64,000 nucleotides of DNA from Octopus bimaculoides (GCF_001194135.2 NC_068984.1:22023530-22087529), one strand, 5' to 3'. Positions 1-56,663 are shown, numbered from the stretch's first letter. Notes: generated by a model from the letters alone, not told the origin. Numbers and translations: made by a program.

Positions 1-177
1 GCTTGGAACACCCAGAATTATCGTATAAAGTATCTTCAAGTTACATCAGAAATTTATAACATGTTCATGACATGACGTACACACACACCCCCCACACATA
101 CATTGGTGTGTGTATGTATGGTGTTCAGTGAAGGGAAAATATAATCTAAGGACAGAAGATACGTTTCAGATATAACA

Positions 178-5060: not shown

Positions 5061-5726
5061 AACAGCATCAACATAGTCAGCAAAAAATAAACGGCAACAA
5101 AAACAACACTAAAGCAACAAAAAGAAAATTAACAGAAGAAGAAAAAGAAGAAGAAGACGAAGAAGAAGAAGGACAACAACAAGGACAACAACAACAACAA
5201 TGGTGCAAACTAAAGTAAATCGATGTATCTGCGAGGTTAACAGTGTACTTTGTTTCACTGTAAGATTTTCATTGTCTGCGATTTTAGCTGAAATTTTTGT
5301 TTCTTTCTTCCGGTTGTCATGACGGCGTGGATGTAAAGAATGGAGATGACTTGCCAATGGGACAGCAGAATAATCTCTGTGTGTGTGTGTGTGTGTGTGT
5401 GAAGAAAGCTTGTGAAAAGGAAAAAAGATGGCGAATGAAAACGTGTGAAAATAAAAAAAGAACGTGAATAACATTCAAATAGACATTTTTAGAGAATGTC
5501 AGACAGAAGAATTGAGAAAGAGAGATACAGGGCCATTGAGAAAGGGATACAGAGAAGAGCATGATAGGAAGAAAGAAACAAAGAAGTGAGAGAGAAGTAA
5601 ATAACGATGTTTATGTAAAGGTGCAAATGAGAGAGAAACAGGGAGAAAAAGCAGAGCTGAAGGTAGATCAAAGAAAGTGAAGTGGAGTGAATATGCGAGC
5701 GTGCAATAAACGAGAATTTATTATTA

Positions 5727-5832
5727 ATCACAACAATTGTTTCGACACGTATAGCATCGATCCCTCACGGGCAGAACATTCAACAACTGGTTCAGAAACA
5801 TCTGTTGGTGCAGATGTGTCTCATCGGGTGAT
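5727..5832 (-). ncRNA. Hammerhead ribozyme with 67-nt insertion in stem II (apparently intact)
   Basis: Reverse complement: ATCAC-CCGATGA-GACAC-[67 nt]-GTGTC-GAAA-CAATTG-T-T-GTGAT. Perfect 5-bp helices I and II, palindromic ACAATTGT helix III, GUU triplet 5734-5732. Confidence 0.8.
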
Positions 5833-5994
5833 AAATAGACACAACGCGTTAAAATAATATAATTCTGTAATGTATATTTTTATTTCGTAGAAAGAAAAGC
5901 GGTAAAACGAAGGAAATATCTTCATTTACATAGGAAATCAAAAATAAAATCACAGATACAGGAAATAAATGAACACACAATACAGTATGTTTGA

Positions 5995-6700
5995 ACCAAG
6001 ATCGCTGGAAAATTGTTTGCCGCTTTGGGCAAATGTTTTCCTAAATCTAATCGATATCATGCTAACTTTAATCAGCACACCGTGAACGTTCACTACGCTA
6101 ACTCTACTAATTTAGAGCAGCTTATGCATTGCATAAACAATAGTAAAATGCTACAAAGTTTAATAACCCAACTCCTGGATCTAGCGAACATATGCATCTA
6201 TACACCAACAAAAGAGATGTAAACCGCAATGAAAAACATCAATTACGGCCAAATTGTAATAGTAGAAATGCTTATGATACAGCTAACACGGTAAAGATGT
6301 CGGAAAATGGAGTCGGAACTGACTTATATACAAATAAATATGATGAATGATCATGCAAAGAAAAATCAAAATGCCCATTGATGAACCTCTTTGTATGAGT
6401 ACAAATCTTGTATATAAGTGTACAGTACACACAAGGGAGGGGCGTATGTTTACACTGAGCAGACGGCTGATTTATTTAAGAATCGCTATCGTAACCATGT
6501 CACCAGCTTTAAGACAATCAATAAGAGACATTCAACATCTTTGACCGATTTTGTATGGCGACTGAAGGAGGATAAAATTAAGTAAAGCATAACTTGGTCC
6601 ATAGTAAGGCACGCGAAACTATACAATATCATTTTCAGAAGATGCCATTTCTGCTCCGAGGAATCCTTGTCTATTCTCTGGACTAATGAGATGATCATTA
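5995..6700 (+). pseudogene. Decayed PLE RT C-terminus/linker and GIY-YIG endonuclease (frameshifts, stops)
   Basis: Stitched translation: TKIAGKLFAALGKCFPKSNRYHANFNQHTVNVHYANSTNL... *SCKEKSKCP-DEPLCMSTNLVYKCTVHTREG-VYTEQTADLFKNRYRNHVTSFKTINKRHSTSLTDFVWRLKEDKIK*SITWSIVRHAKLYNIIFRRCHFCSEESLSIL. Matches the remembered PLE pattern FP..H..FN..TVKVSY / CxC..CP...C...+VY....Y+G.T...FK.RY.NH..SF...T.LS..+W.LK...I.W.I...C.LC.EE. Confidence 0.85.
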
Positions 6701-7158
6701 ATGGAATTTTTGAAAGACTCTCAAGACGCATATAAATGTACGTTCGCAGATGCAATGGGAATGTATTTGAGTAACAGTTCACTTAATTTACTTTAAGGTA
6801 TGAATAAATAAAGTTTAGTTTTAACCTCCCCATTTTAATAAACAACAAAGTGCTATTTAACTCGCTTTATGATCATGAGCGCACCAAACCACACGTGTGC
6901 GTTTGCTTACATTTTCGCGGATACTCGTATTAGAGAGTGTACACGTGCCATGCAGCTTGTGCGAGGGCGTTCATATTTGTTAACGGTTATTTTAAATACT
7001 TTTCTCGCTGTATTGTGTGTTCGTTTCTTTTCTGCATCTGTGATTTTATTTTTGATCTTCGATGTAAATGAAGATATTTCCTTCGTTTTGTCGCTTTCCT
7101 TTCTACGAAATGAGAAAATACATCGGGGAACTATTATTTTAACAAGTTGTATCTATTT

Positions 7159-7264
7159 ATCACGCGATAAGACACATCTCCACCGCCGGATGCTTCTGAA
7201 CCAGTTGTTGAATGTACCACCCATGAGGGATCGATGATCGACATGTCGAAGCAATTGTCTTGAT
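7159..7264 (+). ncRNA. Decayed copy of the 5727 hammerhead
   Basis: ATCAC-GCGATAA-GACAC-[insert]-ATGTC-GAAG-CAATT-GTC-TTGAT; core positions are mutated. Confidence 0.7.
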
Positions 7265-10199
7265 TAATTATAAATTCTCGTATATTCTATCTTCCGTGTT
7301 TCATTTACCATATAGATGACGATCACTGTGAAAGTGATTGTGCTTTACCAGTAAGCTACGAGGTGTAAACCATTCGTTTTATTATCCAATACATACATAA
7401 TGCATACATACATACATACATAAAAACATAAACACACACACACACACACACACTAATATGTACACACAAACACAGACAAACCCAATTCTATGTTTGTTCT
7501 TTTACACTATTAAACTCTCTGAACCAATGTTTACCTCAACAAAGATTCAAATATACATTACTTCGATTAACATTTAGATGTTGTTCGAAATGGTAGCCAA
7601 TGAACAGCTGCGTTCTACTTGCGAAATATTTACCGTGTAACTTCTTCATGCGAGTTCCTTCCGCCGAAATATGGCATGCCACCATCGTCAAATAGTTAAA
7701 TGCACATGGATTCCTTGATGCGATTTTATGAAGTTGTTTTAACACTTTTCTATATTTATCATAATGTCTGATGTTGCAGTCGTAAAAATCCTAACATTTT
7801 TTTACTGTCTATGGAGAATTTGGATGTCTTATTCTTTAAATTGAACCGGTTGAAATATGTTGCGATGATCAAGACATGTGTTCCTACATCCTCTATTAAT
7901 AATAATGTCACTTCTTTAAGACACAGTTTGAGTTATACAGAGTTAGTTTTGCTTTAAGAAGAAAATAATGCAAAGCGATTTTCGTTCATTTTGTTTGTCG
8001 GAGTCGTACCTTGATTCGTTCCAAACGTTGGTCATTCATAAGTGGTTTTGTGCTTGCGGTCAAGTATTTTGCGATTATTACTGTCTATATGTCGAAGTTT
8101 GCCGATAGCAGGAATTCGGATTTCTGAAACTCGACCTGTCTTAAAAATAGAGTTGTTTTCCCACAAAAGAAAAAGTTATTTAGCAAAAAATGTGAAAGAA
8201 GAAATGATAGATAAAATAGCTAGCTAGATAAGGTAGTAAGTGAGTAAGAGTATTAACCGAGAGAGTGTTACTCAGAAAGGTAAACTAGCAGGAGCAAGAA
8301 ATAGAGATTAGATAAGCAAATTGGATAAAGCCAAATATTAGTACGACCAGAGAGGGAGAGAGAGAAAGAGAGAGACACTCACACACCAAGTGAGAGAGAA
8401 AGAGAGACAGAGAGACAGAGAGACACAGAGAAATGTTGAGAGTTTACGAGTAACTGGGAGGATGGGGGAAAGCTACAGAAAAGCGAATAGAATAAATTTT
8501 TGAGTTATAGGGAAAGAAAATATCAGAGGATGCTTTTTTTTTTGATAAATAGATAGATAGACAAAGGCACAATAGAAGGAATGATTAGAAATGGAAAGAT
8601 AAAATGTAGCTGAAAATCAGAGAGAGAGAGAAAGAAAGAGAGAGAAAGAAACAGAGAGAAAGAAAGAGAGAAAGTGAGGTATACAGAGTCAATGTAGTAG
8701 GAGAGAAAAAAGAGGGACAGAGAAATATACACTGTTACAAATATAATACATAAGGACTATAGGATACAAAAAACAATGAAATTGAAGAATTGGAACTACA
8801 GGAAGGAGAGAGGGAGAGAGAGAGCGAGCGGAGAGAGAAGGATATTGAAGTAGTTGAGGTCAAAATGCCACAAAATATATCGAGAAAATAGTTGTGCCAG
8901 AATTAACGGTACAACATGAAAATGGCTTCCCTTTCAAAACATCAGCCATTTAGCTTATTTGGTTTCTCCTGGCCTTTCCAGTTTCAGGTCAATCGCACCC
9001 TTCTTTCTCTCTCTGACCATCTACTTTGTATCTTTCCGTAGACACTAGCTCAATATCATTCTTTATCGCGTTTGATGTATCTATATTTTTCTATCTTTCT
9101 TAGCCTTTCGTCTTTACGTTTGCGTTTTCTCCTTTCTTATGTATATTTAATCTATTTCTATCTAACTGTTTTACATTTTCGGTTATTTATTCCGTACACA
9201 TCTTACAAAATCTTTGAACTTTTTATGCCCATTCCTACCTCTCTCACGTCTGTTTACCTGTCTATTTACCTGCGAGTCTGTGTGTTTGTCTTTTACAATT
9301 CTCAATTTTCTCGTCTTACCTTATCTATTTTCAATATATGTCTTCTATCCATAAATTTACTTCGGCTATTTCGGTGGTTATTAAACATTTTTATTATTGA
9401 AGGTATGCACACTTCTGTGCTTATGAGAGTTGAAAACAACTCATGGCGTGATGTCAAGACCAAAGACTGGATTTATGAGCATAATCTACCCATCATTACA
9501 AGTGTTGTTCAACACAGCGAATGTACTGAACATCATGGCATATTGGACGATGTACTTTGAAGACTATCGCACTAGATGAAAGAGAGAACCTACCAAAGAT
9601 AATGAGGGCCAGAGATTTCTAGAATGAGGCAGTGAAAGGTTTCTCGGTCAGAGCCACTTGACGGAGAAGCACCTTTCAAAAATATATATAAAACCGTGCA
9701 CAGATATATAACAATTTATTATGTAGATACTTACCAAATTCACTCACATTCAGTTGTAGAACATACACGAACACTCTTACATACACACAGATATAAGCGC
9801 ATAGAAATGAGGAGTCGTACACGTCACACAGTTCGTGCTATAATGCACACAGAGATATACTACAAACGCTTACAGCGCTTTAGTTATTATCTAGTACCTG
9901 TAAATAGATATCCTTGATGCAATGTATATAAAAAGATAACTTTAAAGAAAAGATAATACAATGCTAAGTTTGGAACACAATAATTTTATTAAAATGATGG
10001 ATTGTTATGGTAATATTACATATTATACATAAGCACAATTATACACAAACACAAAGACATACGCACAACACAACCAAATAACACACTCAGCATGCACATT
10101 CGTTTATACATATAAAACAATAAACAACAGTTAAAGAAACATGTAAACTAATCAAATTGATTTATTTATTCAAATATACAGAATACGCATATAATTCCG

Positions 10200-45040: not shown

Positions 45041-45369
45041 NNNNNNNNNNNNNNNNNNNNNNNNNNNNNNNNNNNNNNNNNNNNNNNNNNNNNNNNNNNN
45101 NNNNNNNNNNNNNNNNNNNNNNNNNNNNNNNNNNNNNNNNNNNNNNNNNNNNNNNNNNNNNNNNNNNNNNNNNNNNNNNNNNNNNNNNNNNNNNCCTCCA
45201 TTGGTCTATGTTGTCTAAATACATGCCACTGGCCAGCCTGAATTATTTCTCTTAGCACATTTTTTCAAATGCGTATCAATAATGAGTGACAAATGAAAAT
45301 TAATAGAATTTAATACAGTTTATTATAAAATGATGTAATACGTATTTTTGTAATATAATTTATAAAGAA

Positions 45370-45797
45370 ATTGGCAGAAATGTTAGCACGCCGGGCAAAA
45401 TGCTTGGCGGTTTTTCGTTTGTCTTTACGTTCTGGGTTCAAATTCCGTAGACGTCGACTTTGATTTCCATCCTTTCGGGGTCGATAAATTAAGTACCAGT
45501 TGCGTACTGGGGTCAATCTAATCGACTGTCCCCCTTCCCAAACGTTTCGGGCTTTATGCCTAGAGTAGAATAGAATATAATTAGTAAAGGAATTGGCAGA
45601 AAAGTTAGCACGCCGGACGAAATGCTTAGCGGTTTTTCGTCTGTCTTTATGTTCTGAGTTCAAATTCCGCAGAGGTCGACTGTTCATCCTTTAGGGGTCG
45701 ATAAATTAAGTACCAGCTGCTTACTGGAGTCGATCTAACCGACTAGCCCTCCCTCCCCAAGCGTTTCGAGCCTTGTGCCTAGAGTAGATAAGAATAT
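45370..45797 (+). mobile_element. Tandem pair of SINE family B
   Basis: Two ~220-bp units, TTGGCAGAAA..GTTAGCACGCCGG..GCCTAGAGTAGA. Confidence 0.92.
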
Positions 45798-55466: not shown

Positions 55467-56663
55467 ATAGAAATATGTTACAAAAAGAAAATAGGAGCTA
55501 TATATATATACATACACACNNNNNNNNNNNNNNNNNNNNNNNNNNNNNNNNNNNNNNNNNNNNNNNNNNNNNNNNNNNNNNNNNNNNNNNNNNNNNNNNN
55601 NNNNNNNNNNNNNNNNNNNNNNNNNNNNNNNNNNNNNNNNNNNNNNNNNNNNNNNNNNNNNNNNNNNNNNNNNNNNNNNNNNNNNNNNNNNNNNNNNNNN
55701 NNNNNNNNNNNNNNNNNNNNNNNNNNNNNNNNNNNNNNNNNNNNNNNNNNNNNNNNNNNNNNNNNNNNNNNNNNNNNNNNNNNNNNNNNNNNNNNNNNNN
55801 NNNNNNNNNNNNNNNNNNNNNNNNNNNNNNNNNNNNNNNNNNNNNNNNNNNNNNNNNNNNNNNNNNNNNNNNNNNNNNNNNNNNNNNNNNNNNNNNNNNN
55901 NNNNNNNNNNNNNNNNNNNNNNNNNNNNNNNNNNNNNNNNNNNNNNNNNNNNNNNNNNNNNNNNNNNNNNNNNNNNNNNNNNNNNNNNNNNNNNNNNNNN
56001 NNNNNNNNNNNNNNNNNNNNNNNNNNNNNNNNNNNNNNNNNNNNNNNNNNNNNNNNNNNNNNNNNNNNNNNNNNNNNNNNNNNNNNNNNNNNNNNNNNNN
56101 NNNNNNNNNNNNNNNNNNNNNNNNNNNNNNNNNNNNNNNNNNNNNNNNNNNNNNNNNNNNNNNNNNNNNNNNNNNNNNNNNNNTATATATATATACATGC
56201 ACGTAAAGAAAAGATAAGTTTCGTGAATGCCTTTACTTCATTTGAAACAGAAATGAATATCGAAGCTTACAGCTACTTAGGAAAACGCAATGAAGAAATA
56301 CTTCTACACAGTTTCATTTATAAAGCTTCATTGATCCAAGGCTATGATAGAAAACACTTACCCAGTGTGACTGGCAATGAGATCGAAACTCGAAACTAAA
56401 ACTATGTGAACGTGAAATGAGCTTCTTAATCACCGAACCATTCCTTGTATATGATGCCTGACTTAAATAAAAATTAAATTCTTGCTGTAATTTAAATCGA
56501 TTACTTTACTTAAACTGTGCCTACTAGTTGAAAAATGCTGAATTTATAGTTTTATTGTGATACAGAGAAGACGATATATGGTACGCAATCAGACTTCGAG
56601 TTCTTGACAACCATTGCTGAATGACGAAAAATAATAGTGTAATATATATATATATATATATAT

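What the first reader, a model, noticed from the sequence alone, without database searches (positions are those of the whole stretch)
5711..7280. Naiad-like PLE whose terminal hammerhead has a 67-nt structured domain inserted in stem II
Seen: the 275-bp inverted arms flank a decayed GIY-YIG ORF. In the left arm (minus) the two halves of an HHR core are 77 nt apart but pair perfectly: ATCAC/GTGAT (helix I), GACAC/GTGTC (helix II) and a palindromic ACAATTGT helix III with GUU. The 67-nt insert has its own hairpins (ATCTG-caccaa-CAGAT; CCC-GTGA-GGG with a GNRA loop). The core is the CCGAUGA (U4C) variant. The right-arm copy has decayed core positions. Inference: length-limited HHR descriptor searches would miss this motif, and the insert may be a tertiary-contact or protein-binding module. 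The inverted copy being intact while the in-line copy decayed may be chance.
Basis: partly seen in the sequence, partly recalled or inferred. Interest (0 to 1): 0.82.

Follow-up and report, generated by a model that had tools for sequence, protein, structure and literature searches.

The report
Decayed Hydra-type Penelope retroelement with hammerhead relic
This is a dead, truncated copy of a known kind of jumping gene (a Penelope-like retroelement of the "Hydra" clade, not "Naiad") whose ends carry the worn-out remains of the self-cutting hammerhead RNA such elements normally have. The one unusual feature is that one stem of the hammerhead is greatly lengthened in this family.

Summary
The sequence features are real. 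The arms 5705-5985 and 7008-7286 are 281 nt and 85% complementary. A hammerhead-shaped motif lies on the minus strand at 5832->5727, and my descriptor expects 0.01 such hits per window by chance.

The interpretation needs correcting on four points.
1. The ORF is not Naiad-like. Its relatives carry a reverse transcriptase (RT) upstream and the GIY-YIG endonuclease (EN) at the C-terminus. They have a CxCX5C linker, no cysteine pair between GIY and YIG, and CxxC before the catalytic Glu. These are the published hallmarks of the Hydra clade of Penelope-like elements, where hammerheads are already known.
2. The locus is the classic Penelope insertion layout. A 5'-truncated copy (5986-~7397) abuts an inverted fragment (5705-5985). 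It is not an element with terminal inverted repeats.
3. CCGAUGA (U4C) is private to this locus. Five independent related copies give the consensus CUGAUGA...GAAAC.
4. The GNRA loop is also private to this copy.

In the consensus, helix II is 9 bp and closes a 59-nt branched insert (77-nt domain, -25.8 kcal/mol, z -3.2). A distant relative (L014) has a compact hammerhead instead. Rfam misses the motif.

There is no covariation, because all copies are neutrally decayed and none is intact. The long helix II is a modest structural variant of a known ribozyme-retroelement pairing.

The parts
5705..5985 (-). Inverted fragment of the element's 3' UTR (left arm). It lacks the last ~110 bp of the element.
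   Evidence: 281-nt inverted match to 7008-7286, 85%. It aligns to the 3' regions of L001, L004, L010, L015 and L017.
5727..5832 (-). Hammerhead relic, left arm. Helix I 5832-5828/5731-5727; core CCGAUGA 5827-5821 (U4C); helix II 5820-5816/5748-5744 (9 bp in the consensus: 5820-5812/5752-5744); GAA 5743-5741; helix III palindrome 5740-5733; predicted cut after U5732.
   Evidence: Sequence read. Descriptor hit against 0.01 expected by chance. Family consensus is canonical.
5749..5815 (-). 67-nt stretch closing helix II (59 nt plus 2 x 4 extra stem positions in the family consensus).
   Evidence: In this copy it is no more stable than shuffles. In the consensus, the 77-nt helix II domain folds at -25.8 kcal/mol, z -3.18, as a predicted three-way junction.
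5986..7397 (+). 5'-truncated direct copy of the Hydra-clade PLE: end of the RT-EN linker, EN ORF, and 3' UTR with hammerhead and tail.
   Evidence: blastn to L001 (6234-7397), L004 (6141-7250) and L011 (5987-6720 plus tail 7285-7391). tblastn of P0029 aa 306-493 onto 6007-6690, E 6e-14.
5995..6735 (+). Decayed ORF: RT-EN linker, CxCX5C, and GIY-YIG EN. Pieces: 5995-6159, 6156-6347, 6351-6395, 6398-6442, 6436-6582, 6586-6732. Three frameshifts. In-frame stops at 6348-6350 (replaces the first Cys of CxCX5C), 6396-6398 and 6583-6585. Terminal stop at 6733-6735.
   Evidence: Translations. Homologs P0001/P0002, 63-64% identity. Profile search found 2974 clusters.
7008..7286 (+). Right arm: the same 3' UTR segment, in line with the ORF.
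7159..7264 (+). Hammerhead relic, right arm. Core GCGAUAA (C3G, U4C, G8A), helix II 3' strand AUGUC, GAAG (A15.1G), helix I 3' strand UUGAU.
7287..7397 (+). 3' tail of the element beyond the arm. It is present at one end only and is followed by an (ATAC)n/(AC)n microsatellite at 7389-7452.
   Evidence: Homology to L001 1746-1853 and L011 1-108 (86%). Tandem repeat finder.

Best explanation
The locus is an old, dead insertion of a Penelope-like retroelement (PLE) of the Hydra clade, which has RT followed by a C-terminal GIY-YIG EN. The direct copy (5986-~7397) was 5'-truncated at insertion. It keeps only the end of the RT-EN linker, the EN domain and the 3' UTR. Abutting its 5' end is an inverted fragment of the same 3' UTR (5705-5985). 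This head-to-head layout is described for PLEs and produces the 'inverted arms'.

Each arm carries a relic of the family's 3'-UTR hammerhead, a type I motif. It has a short helix I (5 bp) and a 2-bp helix III capped by a palindromic AAUU loop, so two copies can pair into an 8-bp helix III and cleave as a dimer, as described for PLE hammerheads. In this family helix II is a 9-bp stem closing a 59-nt branched insert.

In active master copies the ribozyme presumably processed tandem or read-through transcripts (inferred from the literature, not shown here). In this locus neither copy should cleave. The left one has U4C, two mismatches in the extended helix II and a strongly favoured misfold. The right one has at least five core or stem hits.

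Shown: anatomy, homology, consensus, chance level. Inferred: past catalytic activity, dimer mechanism, origin of the inverted fragment at insertion.
For: Classification:
- A profile search gives 2974 related clusters. In the long ones the match is C-terminal, for example P0127 450-571 of 628 and P0029 375-493 of 516.
- Upstream in those proteins lie RT-like motifs (YRDDG, FLDV...SNHP). P0127 has weak RVT_1 and GIY-YIG Pfam hits.
- 15 of 100 relatives hit PF01541 GIY-YIG, the only recurrent family.
- CxCX4-9C occurs in 93 of 134 relatives and CxxC..E in 123 of 134. No cysteine pair was seen between GIY and YIG in the relatives inspected. This matches the Hydra description (PMC8557442 section 11).
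- The window ORF is homologous to the RT-EN linker upstream of the EN.

Layout:
- L001 has no inverted arm.
- Homology runs 110 bp past the right arm only.
- L014 shows the same head-to-head arrangement.
- The literature describes inverted 5'-truncated copies and one-sided tails.

Hammerhead:
- The chance expectation is 0.01 per window.
- The consensus of 7 copies is UAUCAC|CUGAUGA|GACACAUCU-59nt-AGAUGUGUC|GAAAC|AAUUGU|N|GUGAU.
- Position 17 is U, C or A and never G.
- The consensus helix II domain has z -3.18. The HHR-compatible fold of the consensus lies within 0.5 kcal/mol of the MFE fold.
- The helix III palindrome self-dimer is -10.4 kcal/mol.
- Relative L014 has a compact hammerhead 144 nt after its ORF stop.
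- PLE hammerhead traits in the literature are a large helix II, a 4-5 bp helix I and a palindromic helix III (PMC4209133).
Against: - No single copy is an intact hammerhead.
- Covariation is no better than shuffles: 77.2% paired against 77.7% shuffled, and 3 double changes against 2.7.
- RNAalifold does not recover the fold.
- Rfam does not score the motif.
- Only 7 copies were available, two of them from this locus, and all others from one set of sequencing runs.
- The window ORF itself has no Pfam hit.
- The structure model was poor (pLDDT 51). Its match to the I-TevI catalytic domain is not significant (E 0.39).
- RT phylogeny and the DKT/RWK motifs of the Hydra clade could not be checked.
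- No cleavage data exist for any long-helix-II PLE hammerhead.
Confidence: 0.8

Rival explanations
1. One reading: a Naiad-like PLE whose terminal hammerhead is a functional U4C-core variant with a dedicated structured module in stem II.
For: The motif geometry in the left arm is as described. Craig et al. report Naiad 'HHR_half_core' cases with the halves 35-50 nt apart, so long-spaced cores in PLEs have been suspected before.
Against: The EN is C-terminal in relatives, with no CCHH and with CxCX5C rather than CX2-5CxxC. U4C and the GNRA loop are private to this locus. The insert of this copy is not stably structured, and this copy misfolds by 9.4 kcal/mol.
Confidence: 0.04
2. The hammerhead resemblance is a coincidence in an AT-rich 3' UTR. 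The family never had a ribozyme here.
For: There is no covariation and no Rfam hit. Every copy is defective. Relatives L012, L018 and L019 show no hammerhead.
Against: The expected chance rate is 0.01 per window. The consensus is closer to the canonical motif than any single copy: CUGAUGA, a 9-bp helix II, GAAAC and a palindromic helix III. The strand and place are correct for a C-terminal-EN PLE, a class in which hammerheads are said to be universal.
Confidence: 0.08
3. It is a DNA element with 280-bp terminal inverted repeats (foldback or TIR transposon) that encodes a stand-alone GIY-YIG nuclease.
For: Symmetric 281-nt arms flank a ~1-kb core. Many database relatives are 160-260 aa 'EN-only' ORFs. 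L012 has tandem EN-only units.
Against: Other copies lack the inverted arm. Homology extends past the right arm but not the left. The ORF continues upstream into sequence homologous to the RT-EN linker of RT-bearing relatives and is cut off at the arm junction. Short ORFs are what 5' truncation and short contigs would produce.
Confidence: 0.03
4. The long helix II insert is an adaptive module (stabiliser, protein or RT binding site, or a switch that sequesters GAAA/helix III), not a tolerated passenger. This is compatible with the best explanation and concerns only the insert.
For: The consensus domain folds well (z -3.18). It is present in all 7 copies. In the window copy an 8-bp alternative pairing joins the insert (CAGUUGUU) to AACAAUUG of the core and helix III.
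Against: No compensatory changes were found in its helices. The GNRA loop is not conserved. Conservation of the insert is no higher than that of the flanks. PLE minimal hammerheads lack loop-loop tertiary contacts, so loop 2 is free to grow neutrally.
Confidence: 0.2

Closest known systems
Hydra clade of Penelope-like elements (Craig, Yushenova, Rodriguez & Arkhipova 2021, PMC8557442)
   Same: C-terminal GIY-YIG EN after the RT (seen in relatives). CxCX5C linker. No CCHH inside GIY-YIG. CxxC next to the catalytic Glu and CxH near the end. Short elements. Hammerhead in the 3' region. Microsatellite-associated ends. Inverted or tandem truncated copies.
   Different: The hammerhead is not 'canonical': helix II carries a 59-nt branched insert. 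The host looks like a cephalopod, since relative P0127 is from Argonauta hians. The original description lists molluscs only in general terms. The RT-side motifs (DKT, RWK) were not seen here.
Minimal type I hammerheads of metazoan PLEs that act as dimers (Cervera & de la Pena 2014, PMC4209133; Lunse et al. 2017, as cited in PMC6765202)
   Same: Type I topology. Helix I of 4-5 bp. Larger-than-usual helix II. G10.1-C11.1 pair. A 2-bp helix III with a palindromic loop able to form an 8-bp intermolecular helix III. Located in the terminal repeats. Pairs of motifs on opposite strands a few hundred bp or more apart.
   Different: Helix II is 9 bp plus a 59-nt branched loop, rather than 6-8 bp with a short loop. 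There is no unpaired base between A9 and G10.1. This locus carries U4C and other core hits.
Naiad PLEs (same 2021 paper)
   Same: A PLE with a GIY-YIG EN, inverted or tandem insertions and a microsatellite bias. Some Naiads have widely spaced 'half cores'.
   Different: Naiads have an N-terminal EN, CCHH, a CX2-5CxxC linker and a CxC domain before the RT. None of these is found here.
Hammerheads with long sequence inside a stem (for example the discontinuous mammalian 3'-UTR hammerhead, Martick et al. 2008, cited in PMC4209133)
   Same: The two core halves are far apart in sequence yet joined by a regular stem, so length-limited searches miss them.
   Different: In that case the two core-bearing strands lie far apart in an mRNA 3' UTR (details are from my own recollection). 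Here the extra sequence closes helix II in a retroelement 3' UTR.

Membership tests
PLE, Hydra clade | GIY-YIG EN located C-terminal to the RT in one ORF | tested here: met
   The match is C-terminal in the long relatives, with RT-like motifs upstream. Window 6007-6690 aligns to P0029 aa 306-493, that is linker plus EN. The window copy itself has lost the RT by 5' truncation.
PLE, Hydra clade | No CCHH motif (no Cys pair between GIY and YIG) | tested here: met
   Window: LVYKCTVHTREG..YVYTEQT. Relatives: VVYKATV...YIGLT, with no Cys pair in the sequences inspected.
PLE, Hydra clade | Linker Zn-finger-like motif modified to CxCX5C | tested here: met
   CSCREKLKC in P0002 and CSCKEKSKC in P0009. 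In the window the first Cys codon is TGA (6348-6350), followed by SCKEKSKC. C.C.{4,9}C occurs in 93 of 134 relatives.
PLE, Hydra clade | [quoted passage not shown] | tested here: met
   Window: RRCHFCSEE. CxxC..E occurs in 123 of 134 relatives and CxH near the C-terminus in 84 of 134. The CxH is lost in the window copy.
PLE, Hydra clade | RT-side signatures (RWK motif, DKT instead of DKG) and placement in an RT phylogeny | not testable with these tools
   No relative with a complete N-terminus was obtained (the longest were 628 and 619 aa, both N-truncated). No reference PLE RT set was available.
PLE, Hydra clade | Canonical hammerhead in the terminal repeat | tested here: inconclusive
   A hammerhead relic is present at the right place and strand, but with a 59-nt insert in helix II. 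Relative L014 has a compact one.
PLE, Hydra clade | Insertion into (TA)n | tested here: inconclusive
   The window copy ends in (ATAC)n/(AC)n. L015, L017 and L019 end in (TA)n(TG)n.
PLE, Naiad clade | N-terminal EN, then CxC domain, then RT | tested here: not met
   The EN is C-terminal in all long relatives. Sequence upstream of the window EN matches the RT-EN linker. Downstream of the EN is a non-coding 3' UTR.
PLE, Naiad clade | CCHH inside GIY-YIG and CX2-5CxxC linker | tested here: not met
Hammerhead ribozyme, type I | Core C3-U4-G5-A6-N7-G8-A9 ... G12-A13-A14, with the A15.1-U16.1 pair and H17 | tested here: inconclusive
   Window left arm: CCGAUGA (U4C), otherwise complete. Window right arm: three 5'-core hits plus A15.1G. 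The family consensus and L001/L010 have CUGAUGA/CUGAAGA and GAAAC. Position 17 is U, C or A.
Hammerhead ribozyme, type I | Three helices around the core, supported by covariation | tested here: inconclusive
   The helices pair in the left arm and perfectly in the consensus. 77% of cells are paired against 33-41% when the partners are slid, but covariation equals the shuffles.
Hammerhead ribozyme, type I | Match to curated Rfam hammerhead models | tested here: not met
   No hit at gathering score or at E<=10 in the window or the family loci. The models do not allow a 59-67 nt loop 2 together with a 2-bp helix III.
Hammerhead ribozyme, type I | Site-specific self-cleavage | not testable with these tools
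   Needs an in vitro transcription and cleavage assay.
GIY-YIG nuclease superfamily | Profile match or fold | tested here: inconclusive
   The window ORF has no Pfam hit. 15 of 100 relatives hit PF01541, best E 1.5e-5. The AF2 core shows the beta-beta-alpha-alpha-beta order, but pLDDT is 51 and the I-TevI match has E 0.39. The family profile has no PDB hit.

The most novel reading that the evidence does not exclude
A lineage of Hydra-clade Penelope elements, probably in cephalopods, evolved a working hammerhead in which helix II is a 77-nt three-way-junction domain. If so, ribozymes of this build escape all current descriptors and covariance models. They may also explain the 'missing' or 'half-core' hammerheads reported for other PLE clades such as Naiad.
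Probability: 0.2. Interest if true: 0.5.

Novelty: new variant of a known kind. Interest (0 to 1): 0.3.

Why it matters
The retroelement is an ordinary decayed copy of a described clade, and a hammerhead in its 3' region is expected. The useful points are practical.
- This family shows that PLE hammerheads can carry about 60 nt inside helix II, so length-limited descriptors and Rfam models under-count them.
- If the long helix II proves active, it would be a natural test case for how much peripheral structure a dimer-type minimal hammerhead tolerates or uses.

Tried and rejected
- Rfam at gathering score and at E<=10 on the window, the locus and the related loci gave no hammerhead, except a weak HH9-like hit in the distant relative L014.
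- Pfam on the stitched window ORF gave nothing.
- A word-indexed protein search with a spurious ORF spanning the arm, meant to fish out more arm-bearing contigs, returned only L004's own product.
- RNAalifold on the 8-row alignment recovered only one 5-bp hairpin.
- The named-structure pair count showed no covariation.
- The AF2 model of relative P0154 was too poor for a significant fold match.
- The family profile against PDB sequences gave no hit.
- The Argonauta locus L018, the tandem locus L012 and the subfamily L019 gave no hammerhead with a relaxed descriptor.
- An attempt to identify the sequencing runs through the literature hit an unrelated accession.
- The TIR-transposon reading was rejected because L001 has no inverted arm and homology is asymmetric.
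- L011's 830 bp between its tail and body could not be shown to be RT-derived.


Full report
CONTEXT. The window is AT-rich eukaryotic assembly sequence: about 35% G+C outside gaps, 15 runs of N, and dense (TA)n/(CA)n microsatellites. No Rfam family reaches its gathering score anywhere in it, and no tRNA is found.

1. THE OBSERVATION

The inverted arms are real. 5705-5985 and 7008-7286 are 281 nt and 84.7% identical in reverse complement. No other copy of the arm exists in the window.

On the minus strand of the left arm the sequence reads as follows:
- AUCAC (5832-5828)
- CCGAUGA (5827-5821)
- GACAC (5820-5816)
- 67 nt
- GUGUC (5748-5744)
- GAA (5743-5741)
- ACAAUUGU (5740-5733)
- U5732
- GUGAU (5731-5727)

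I wrote a descriptor with these requirements: helices I and II of at least 5 bp, loop 2 up to 120 nt, GAAA, helix III of at least 2 bp, and position 17 not G. It finds this one site in the window with the relaxed core C[C/U]GANGA, and none with the canonical core. One hundred dinucleotide-preserving shuffles give 0.01 hits per 57 kb on both strands. The motif is therefore not a chance pattern.

The right-arm copy (7159-7264) reads AUCAC GCGAUAA GACAC ... AUGUC GAAG CAAUUGU C UUGAU, with at least five hits in core and stems.

Two details of the observation do not hold up:
- The 67-nt insert of this copy folds no better than shuffles (-9.8 kcal/mol, z +1.2).
- The whole left-arm RNA prefers a fold in which the insert (CAGUUGUU) pairs with AACAAUUG of the core and helix III. 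The hammerhead-compatible fold is 9.4 kcal/mol worse than that MFE fold.

2. WHAT THE ORF IS

The region between the arms translates, across three frameshifts and three internal stops, into a protein whose pieces are 5995-6159, 6156-6347, 6351-6395, 6398-6442, 6436-6582 and 6586-6732. Pfam does not recognise it.

A word-indexed search found two close relatives, P0001 and P0002, at 63-64% identity. An exhaustive profile search found 2974 clusters with E<=0.001 and 557 with E<=1e-10.
- Most are 160-260 aa.
- In every long one the match lies at the C-terminal end: P0127 450-571 of 628, P0029 375-493 of 516, P0106 288-416 of 512, P0040 234-357 of 383.
- The sequence upstream in these proteins has reverse-transcriptase hallmarks (..FDI..YPSI.., YRDDGL, FLDV..Y.P..K......SNHP).
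- P0127 gives weak Pfam hits to RVT_1 (E 0.019) and GIY-YIG (E 0.0023).
- Among 100 relatives scanned one by one, 15 hit PF01541 GIY-YIG (best E 1.5e-5). No other family recurs.

The family consensus is CNCR-x4-7-CPL.G.CL...VVY.ATV......YIGLT...FK.RY.NH..SF.......TELSK.IW.LK......I.W.I...A..Y.....C.LC..EK..I......LN.RSE....CRH. Its distinguishing features are:
- a CxCX5C-type linker (93 of 134 with C.C.{4,9}C);
- no cysteine pair between GIY and YIG in the sequences inspected;
- CxxC just before the Glu (123 of 134);
- CxH near the end (84 of 134).

Craig et al. [quoted passage not shown] They state that canonical hammerheads were readily detected in it (PMC8557442 section 11). Naiads are defined by an N-terminal EN, CCHH, CX2-5CxxC and a CxC domain, and by lacking canonical hammerheads.

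In the window itself, the sequence upstream of the EN (from 6007) is homologous to the RT-EN linker of P0029 (aa 306-493, E 6e-14). For example, window CFPKSNRYHANFNQHTVNVHYANSTN corresponds to HFPPSSALYKLFNQKKVKLSYSC in P0106. The EN here therefore sat at the C-terminus of a longer ORF that is cut off at the arm junction.

The 'Naiad-like' label is wrong. The element is Hydra-type. One relative (P0127) is annotated from the octopod Argonauta hians, and the microsatellite-rich style of the window fits a cephalopod. The host was not identified.

3. WHAT THE ARMS ARE

Related contigs from one set of sequencing runs (L001-L011, L015-L017, L019) are 67-81% identical to the window copy over the element body (L011's tail segment 86%).
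- Homology between the window and L001 runs from 6234 to 7397, which is 110 bp beyond the right arm. L011 carries the same tail at 86%. The left arm has no such tail: its match ends at 5705.
- L001 has no inverted arm upstream.
- The distant relative L014 has its own head-to-head inverted truncated copy.

The arms are therefore not termini of the element. The locus is a 5'-truncated direct copy (5986-~7397) with an inverted fragment of the same 3' UTR butted against its 5' end. [quoted passage not shown] It also reports dual hammerheads on opposite strands ~100-700 bp apart. The element ends in an (ATAC)n/(AC)n microsatellite. Other copies end in (TA)n(TG)n.

4. THE HAMMERHEAD IN THE FAMILY

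Five further contigs carry the region (L015 and L016 are the same locus). This gives five independent copies in addition to the two window arms (alignment A7). By segment:

5' core:
- window left: CCGATGA
- window right: GCGATAA
- L004: CTGGTGC
- L001: CTGATGA
- L010: CTGAAGA
- L015: CTGAAAA
- L017: CGGAAGA

Helix II 5' strand: GACACATCT in five rows (four independent copies).

Helix II 3' strand:
- window left: ATACGTGTC
- window right: CGACATGTC
- L004: AGATGTGTT
- L001: AGATGTGCC
- L010: AGATTGATT
- L017: ATATGGGTC
- L015: deleted

GAA: present in all but L017.

Helix III: ACAATTGT in window left and L015, with one or two changes in window right, L010 and L017, four in L001, and cut off in L004.

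Position 17: T, C, T, A, C, A, and never G.

Helix I 3' strand: GTGAT in three independent copies.

The majority consensus is UAUCAC CUGAUGA GACACAUCU [59 nt] AGAUGUGUC GAAAC AAUUGU N GUGAU. It has a fully canonical core, a perfect 9-bp helix II, a 5-bp helix I and a palindromic helix III. The consensus being better than every copy is what neutral decay from a functional master produces.

It follows that CCGAUGA is not a 'variant core'. It is a change private to this locus, shared by both arms either because they came from one template or by later conversion. U4 is part of the conserved core; that a change there impairs catalysis is my own recollection of the mutational literature, not shown here. 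The GUGA 'GNRA' loop is likewise private, since the other copies have AUGA, GUAA or AUGC/AUGU.

The consensus helix II domain (77 nt) folds at -25.8 kcal/mol (z -3.18, 0 of 200 shuffles as good) as a long stem opening into two hairpins. The hammerhead-compatible fold of the 115-nt consensus is within 0.5 kcal/mol of its MFE. The palindrome can form an 8-bp intermolecular helix III (-10.4 kcal/mol for a 15-mer pair). This fits the dimer mode proposed and tested for PLE hammerheads (PMC4209133; review PMC6765202).

The family also matches the published PLE hammerhead traits: a helix I of 4-5 bp, a large helix II, the G10.1-C11.1 pair and palindromic 15.2-16.2 with loop 3.

The unusual feature is the length of helix II. 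The distant Hydra-type relative L014 has a compact motif, CCAC CUGAUGA GUGC-UAGAA-GCAU GAAA CCACGGGU A GUGG, 144 nt after its stop codon. In this family the motif lies about 420 nt after the stop and spans 106 nt.

I counted the named structure (helices I, II and III plus the two inner hairpins; 27 pairs) on A7.
- 77.2% of cells are paired, against 77.7% in column shuffles.
- 3 pairs have double changes, against 2.7 in shuffles.
- The covariation score is 0.143, against 0.150 in shuffles.
- Sliding the partners by 1 to 3 columns in either direction drops pairing to 33-41%. That control is biased because the structure was derived from these sequences.
- RNAalifold recovers only one 5-bp hairpin.

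With seven mutually decayed copies the test is uninformative. It neither supports nor refutes the structure. The case for a former ribozyme rests on three things: the chance level; the consensus; and the place and strand in an element class where hammerheads are the rule.

6. MECHANISM, WITH STATUS OF EACH STEP

Shown:
- the element class;
- truncation and inversion;
- the decay of the ORF and of both hammerheads;
- the family consensus.

Inferred from the literature:
- In active copies the hammerhead in the terminal repeat acts on tandem or read-through transcripts. It cleaves as a dimer through the palindromic helix III, probably slowly and perhaps with host factors.
- The inverted fragment arose during integration by the GIY-YIG EN and RT machinery.

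Unknown:
- Whether the 59-nt insert contributes anything. I put about 0.2 on it being adaptive. Minimal PLE hammerheads lack loop-loop contacts, so loop 2 can grow without cost. An alternative 8-bp pairing between the insert and the core in the window copy is noted but not conserved.

7. VERDICT

The sequence features are real, and the class-level call (a PLE with a hammerhead) is right. The clade, the status of the arms, the 'U4C variant' and the 'GNRA module' are not supported. This locus is a dead copy.

The only feature beyond the expected is a family-level expansion of helix II that hides the ribozyme from Rfam and from length-limited descriptors. That is a variant of a known kind, of moderate-to-low interest unless the consensus proves active.

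Noticed in passing
window 17675-18028 (-): A 117-aa ORF with 'NQHGFRCGRDCLTQLL...VIYLDFSKA' looks by eye like a fragment of a LINE-type reverse transcriptase. Pfam gave no hit.
   Followed up: partly
window, 15 N runs (e.g. 920-1633, 14241-14819, 21951-22873, 55520-56183): Many assembly gaps are bordered by (TA)n or (CA)n microsatellites. The gaps therefore look like unresolved simple repeats.
   Followed up: no
window 5782-5789 with 5735-5742 (minus-strand RNA): In the left-arm RNA the insert CAGUUGUU can pair over 8 bp with AACAAUUG (A13-A14 plus helix III), which would hide the core. It dominates the MFE fold of this copy but is not conserved in other copies.
   Followed up: partly
L012 4333-4869 and 6001-6537: Two identical-length 178-aa EN-only ORFs lie 1668 bp apart in a 527-kb contig. 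They look like a tandem array of truncated Hydra-type units, and no hammerhead was detected.
   Followed up: partly
L014 80-390 (-) and 397-942 (+); hammerhead 1104-1144: A distant Hydra-type relative has the same head-to-head inverted truncated copy and a compact hammerhead (HH9-like, 20.9 bits) after the ORF.
   Followed up: yes
L005-L008 about 10-122 (-) and L011 1-108 (+): The 3' tail (window 7285-7397) occurs upstream of other copies, inverted in L005-L008 and direct in L011. It is separated from the body by 400-830 bp of sequence that I could not assign.
   Followed up: partly
L019 826-1180: A more divergent subfamily has a short (~330 nt) 3' UTR ending in (TA)n and no recognisable hammerhead.
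   Followed up: partly
window 45310-45687 (-): An ORF contains an internal duplication of about 60 aa (…LRNLNSEHKDRRKTAKHFVRRANFSANSFTNYI… / …LRNLNPERKDKRKTAKHFARRANISANFFINYI…). This suggests a tandemly duplicated repeat unit. Pfam gave no hit.
   Followed up: no
window 5366-5401 and 7389-7466: (GT)n lies left of the locus and (ATAC)n/(AC)n right of it, and they form inverted matches (I4-I15). The sequence between (GT)n and the left arm (5401-5704) is purine-rich and unrelated to the element tail, so this looks like coincidence or microsatellite targeting.
   Followed up: partly
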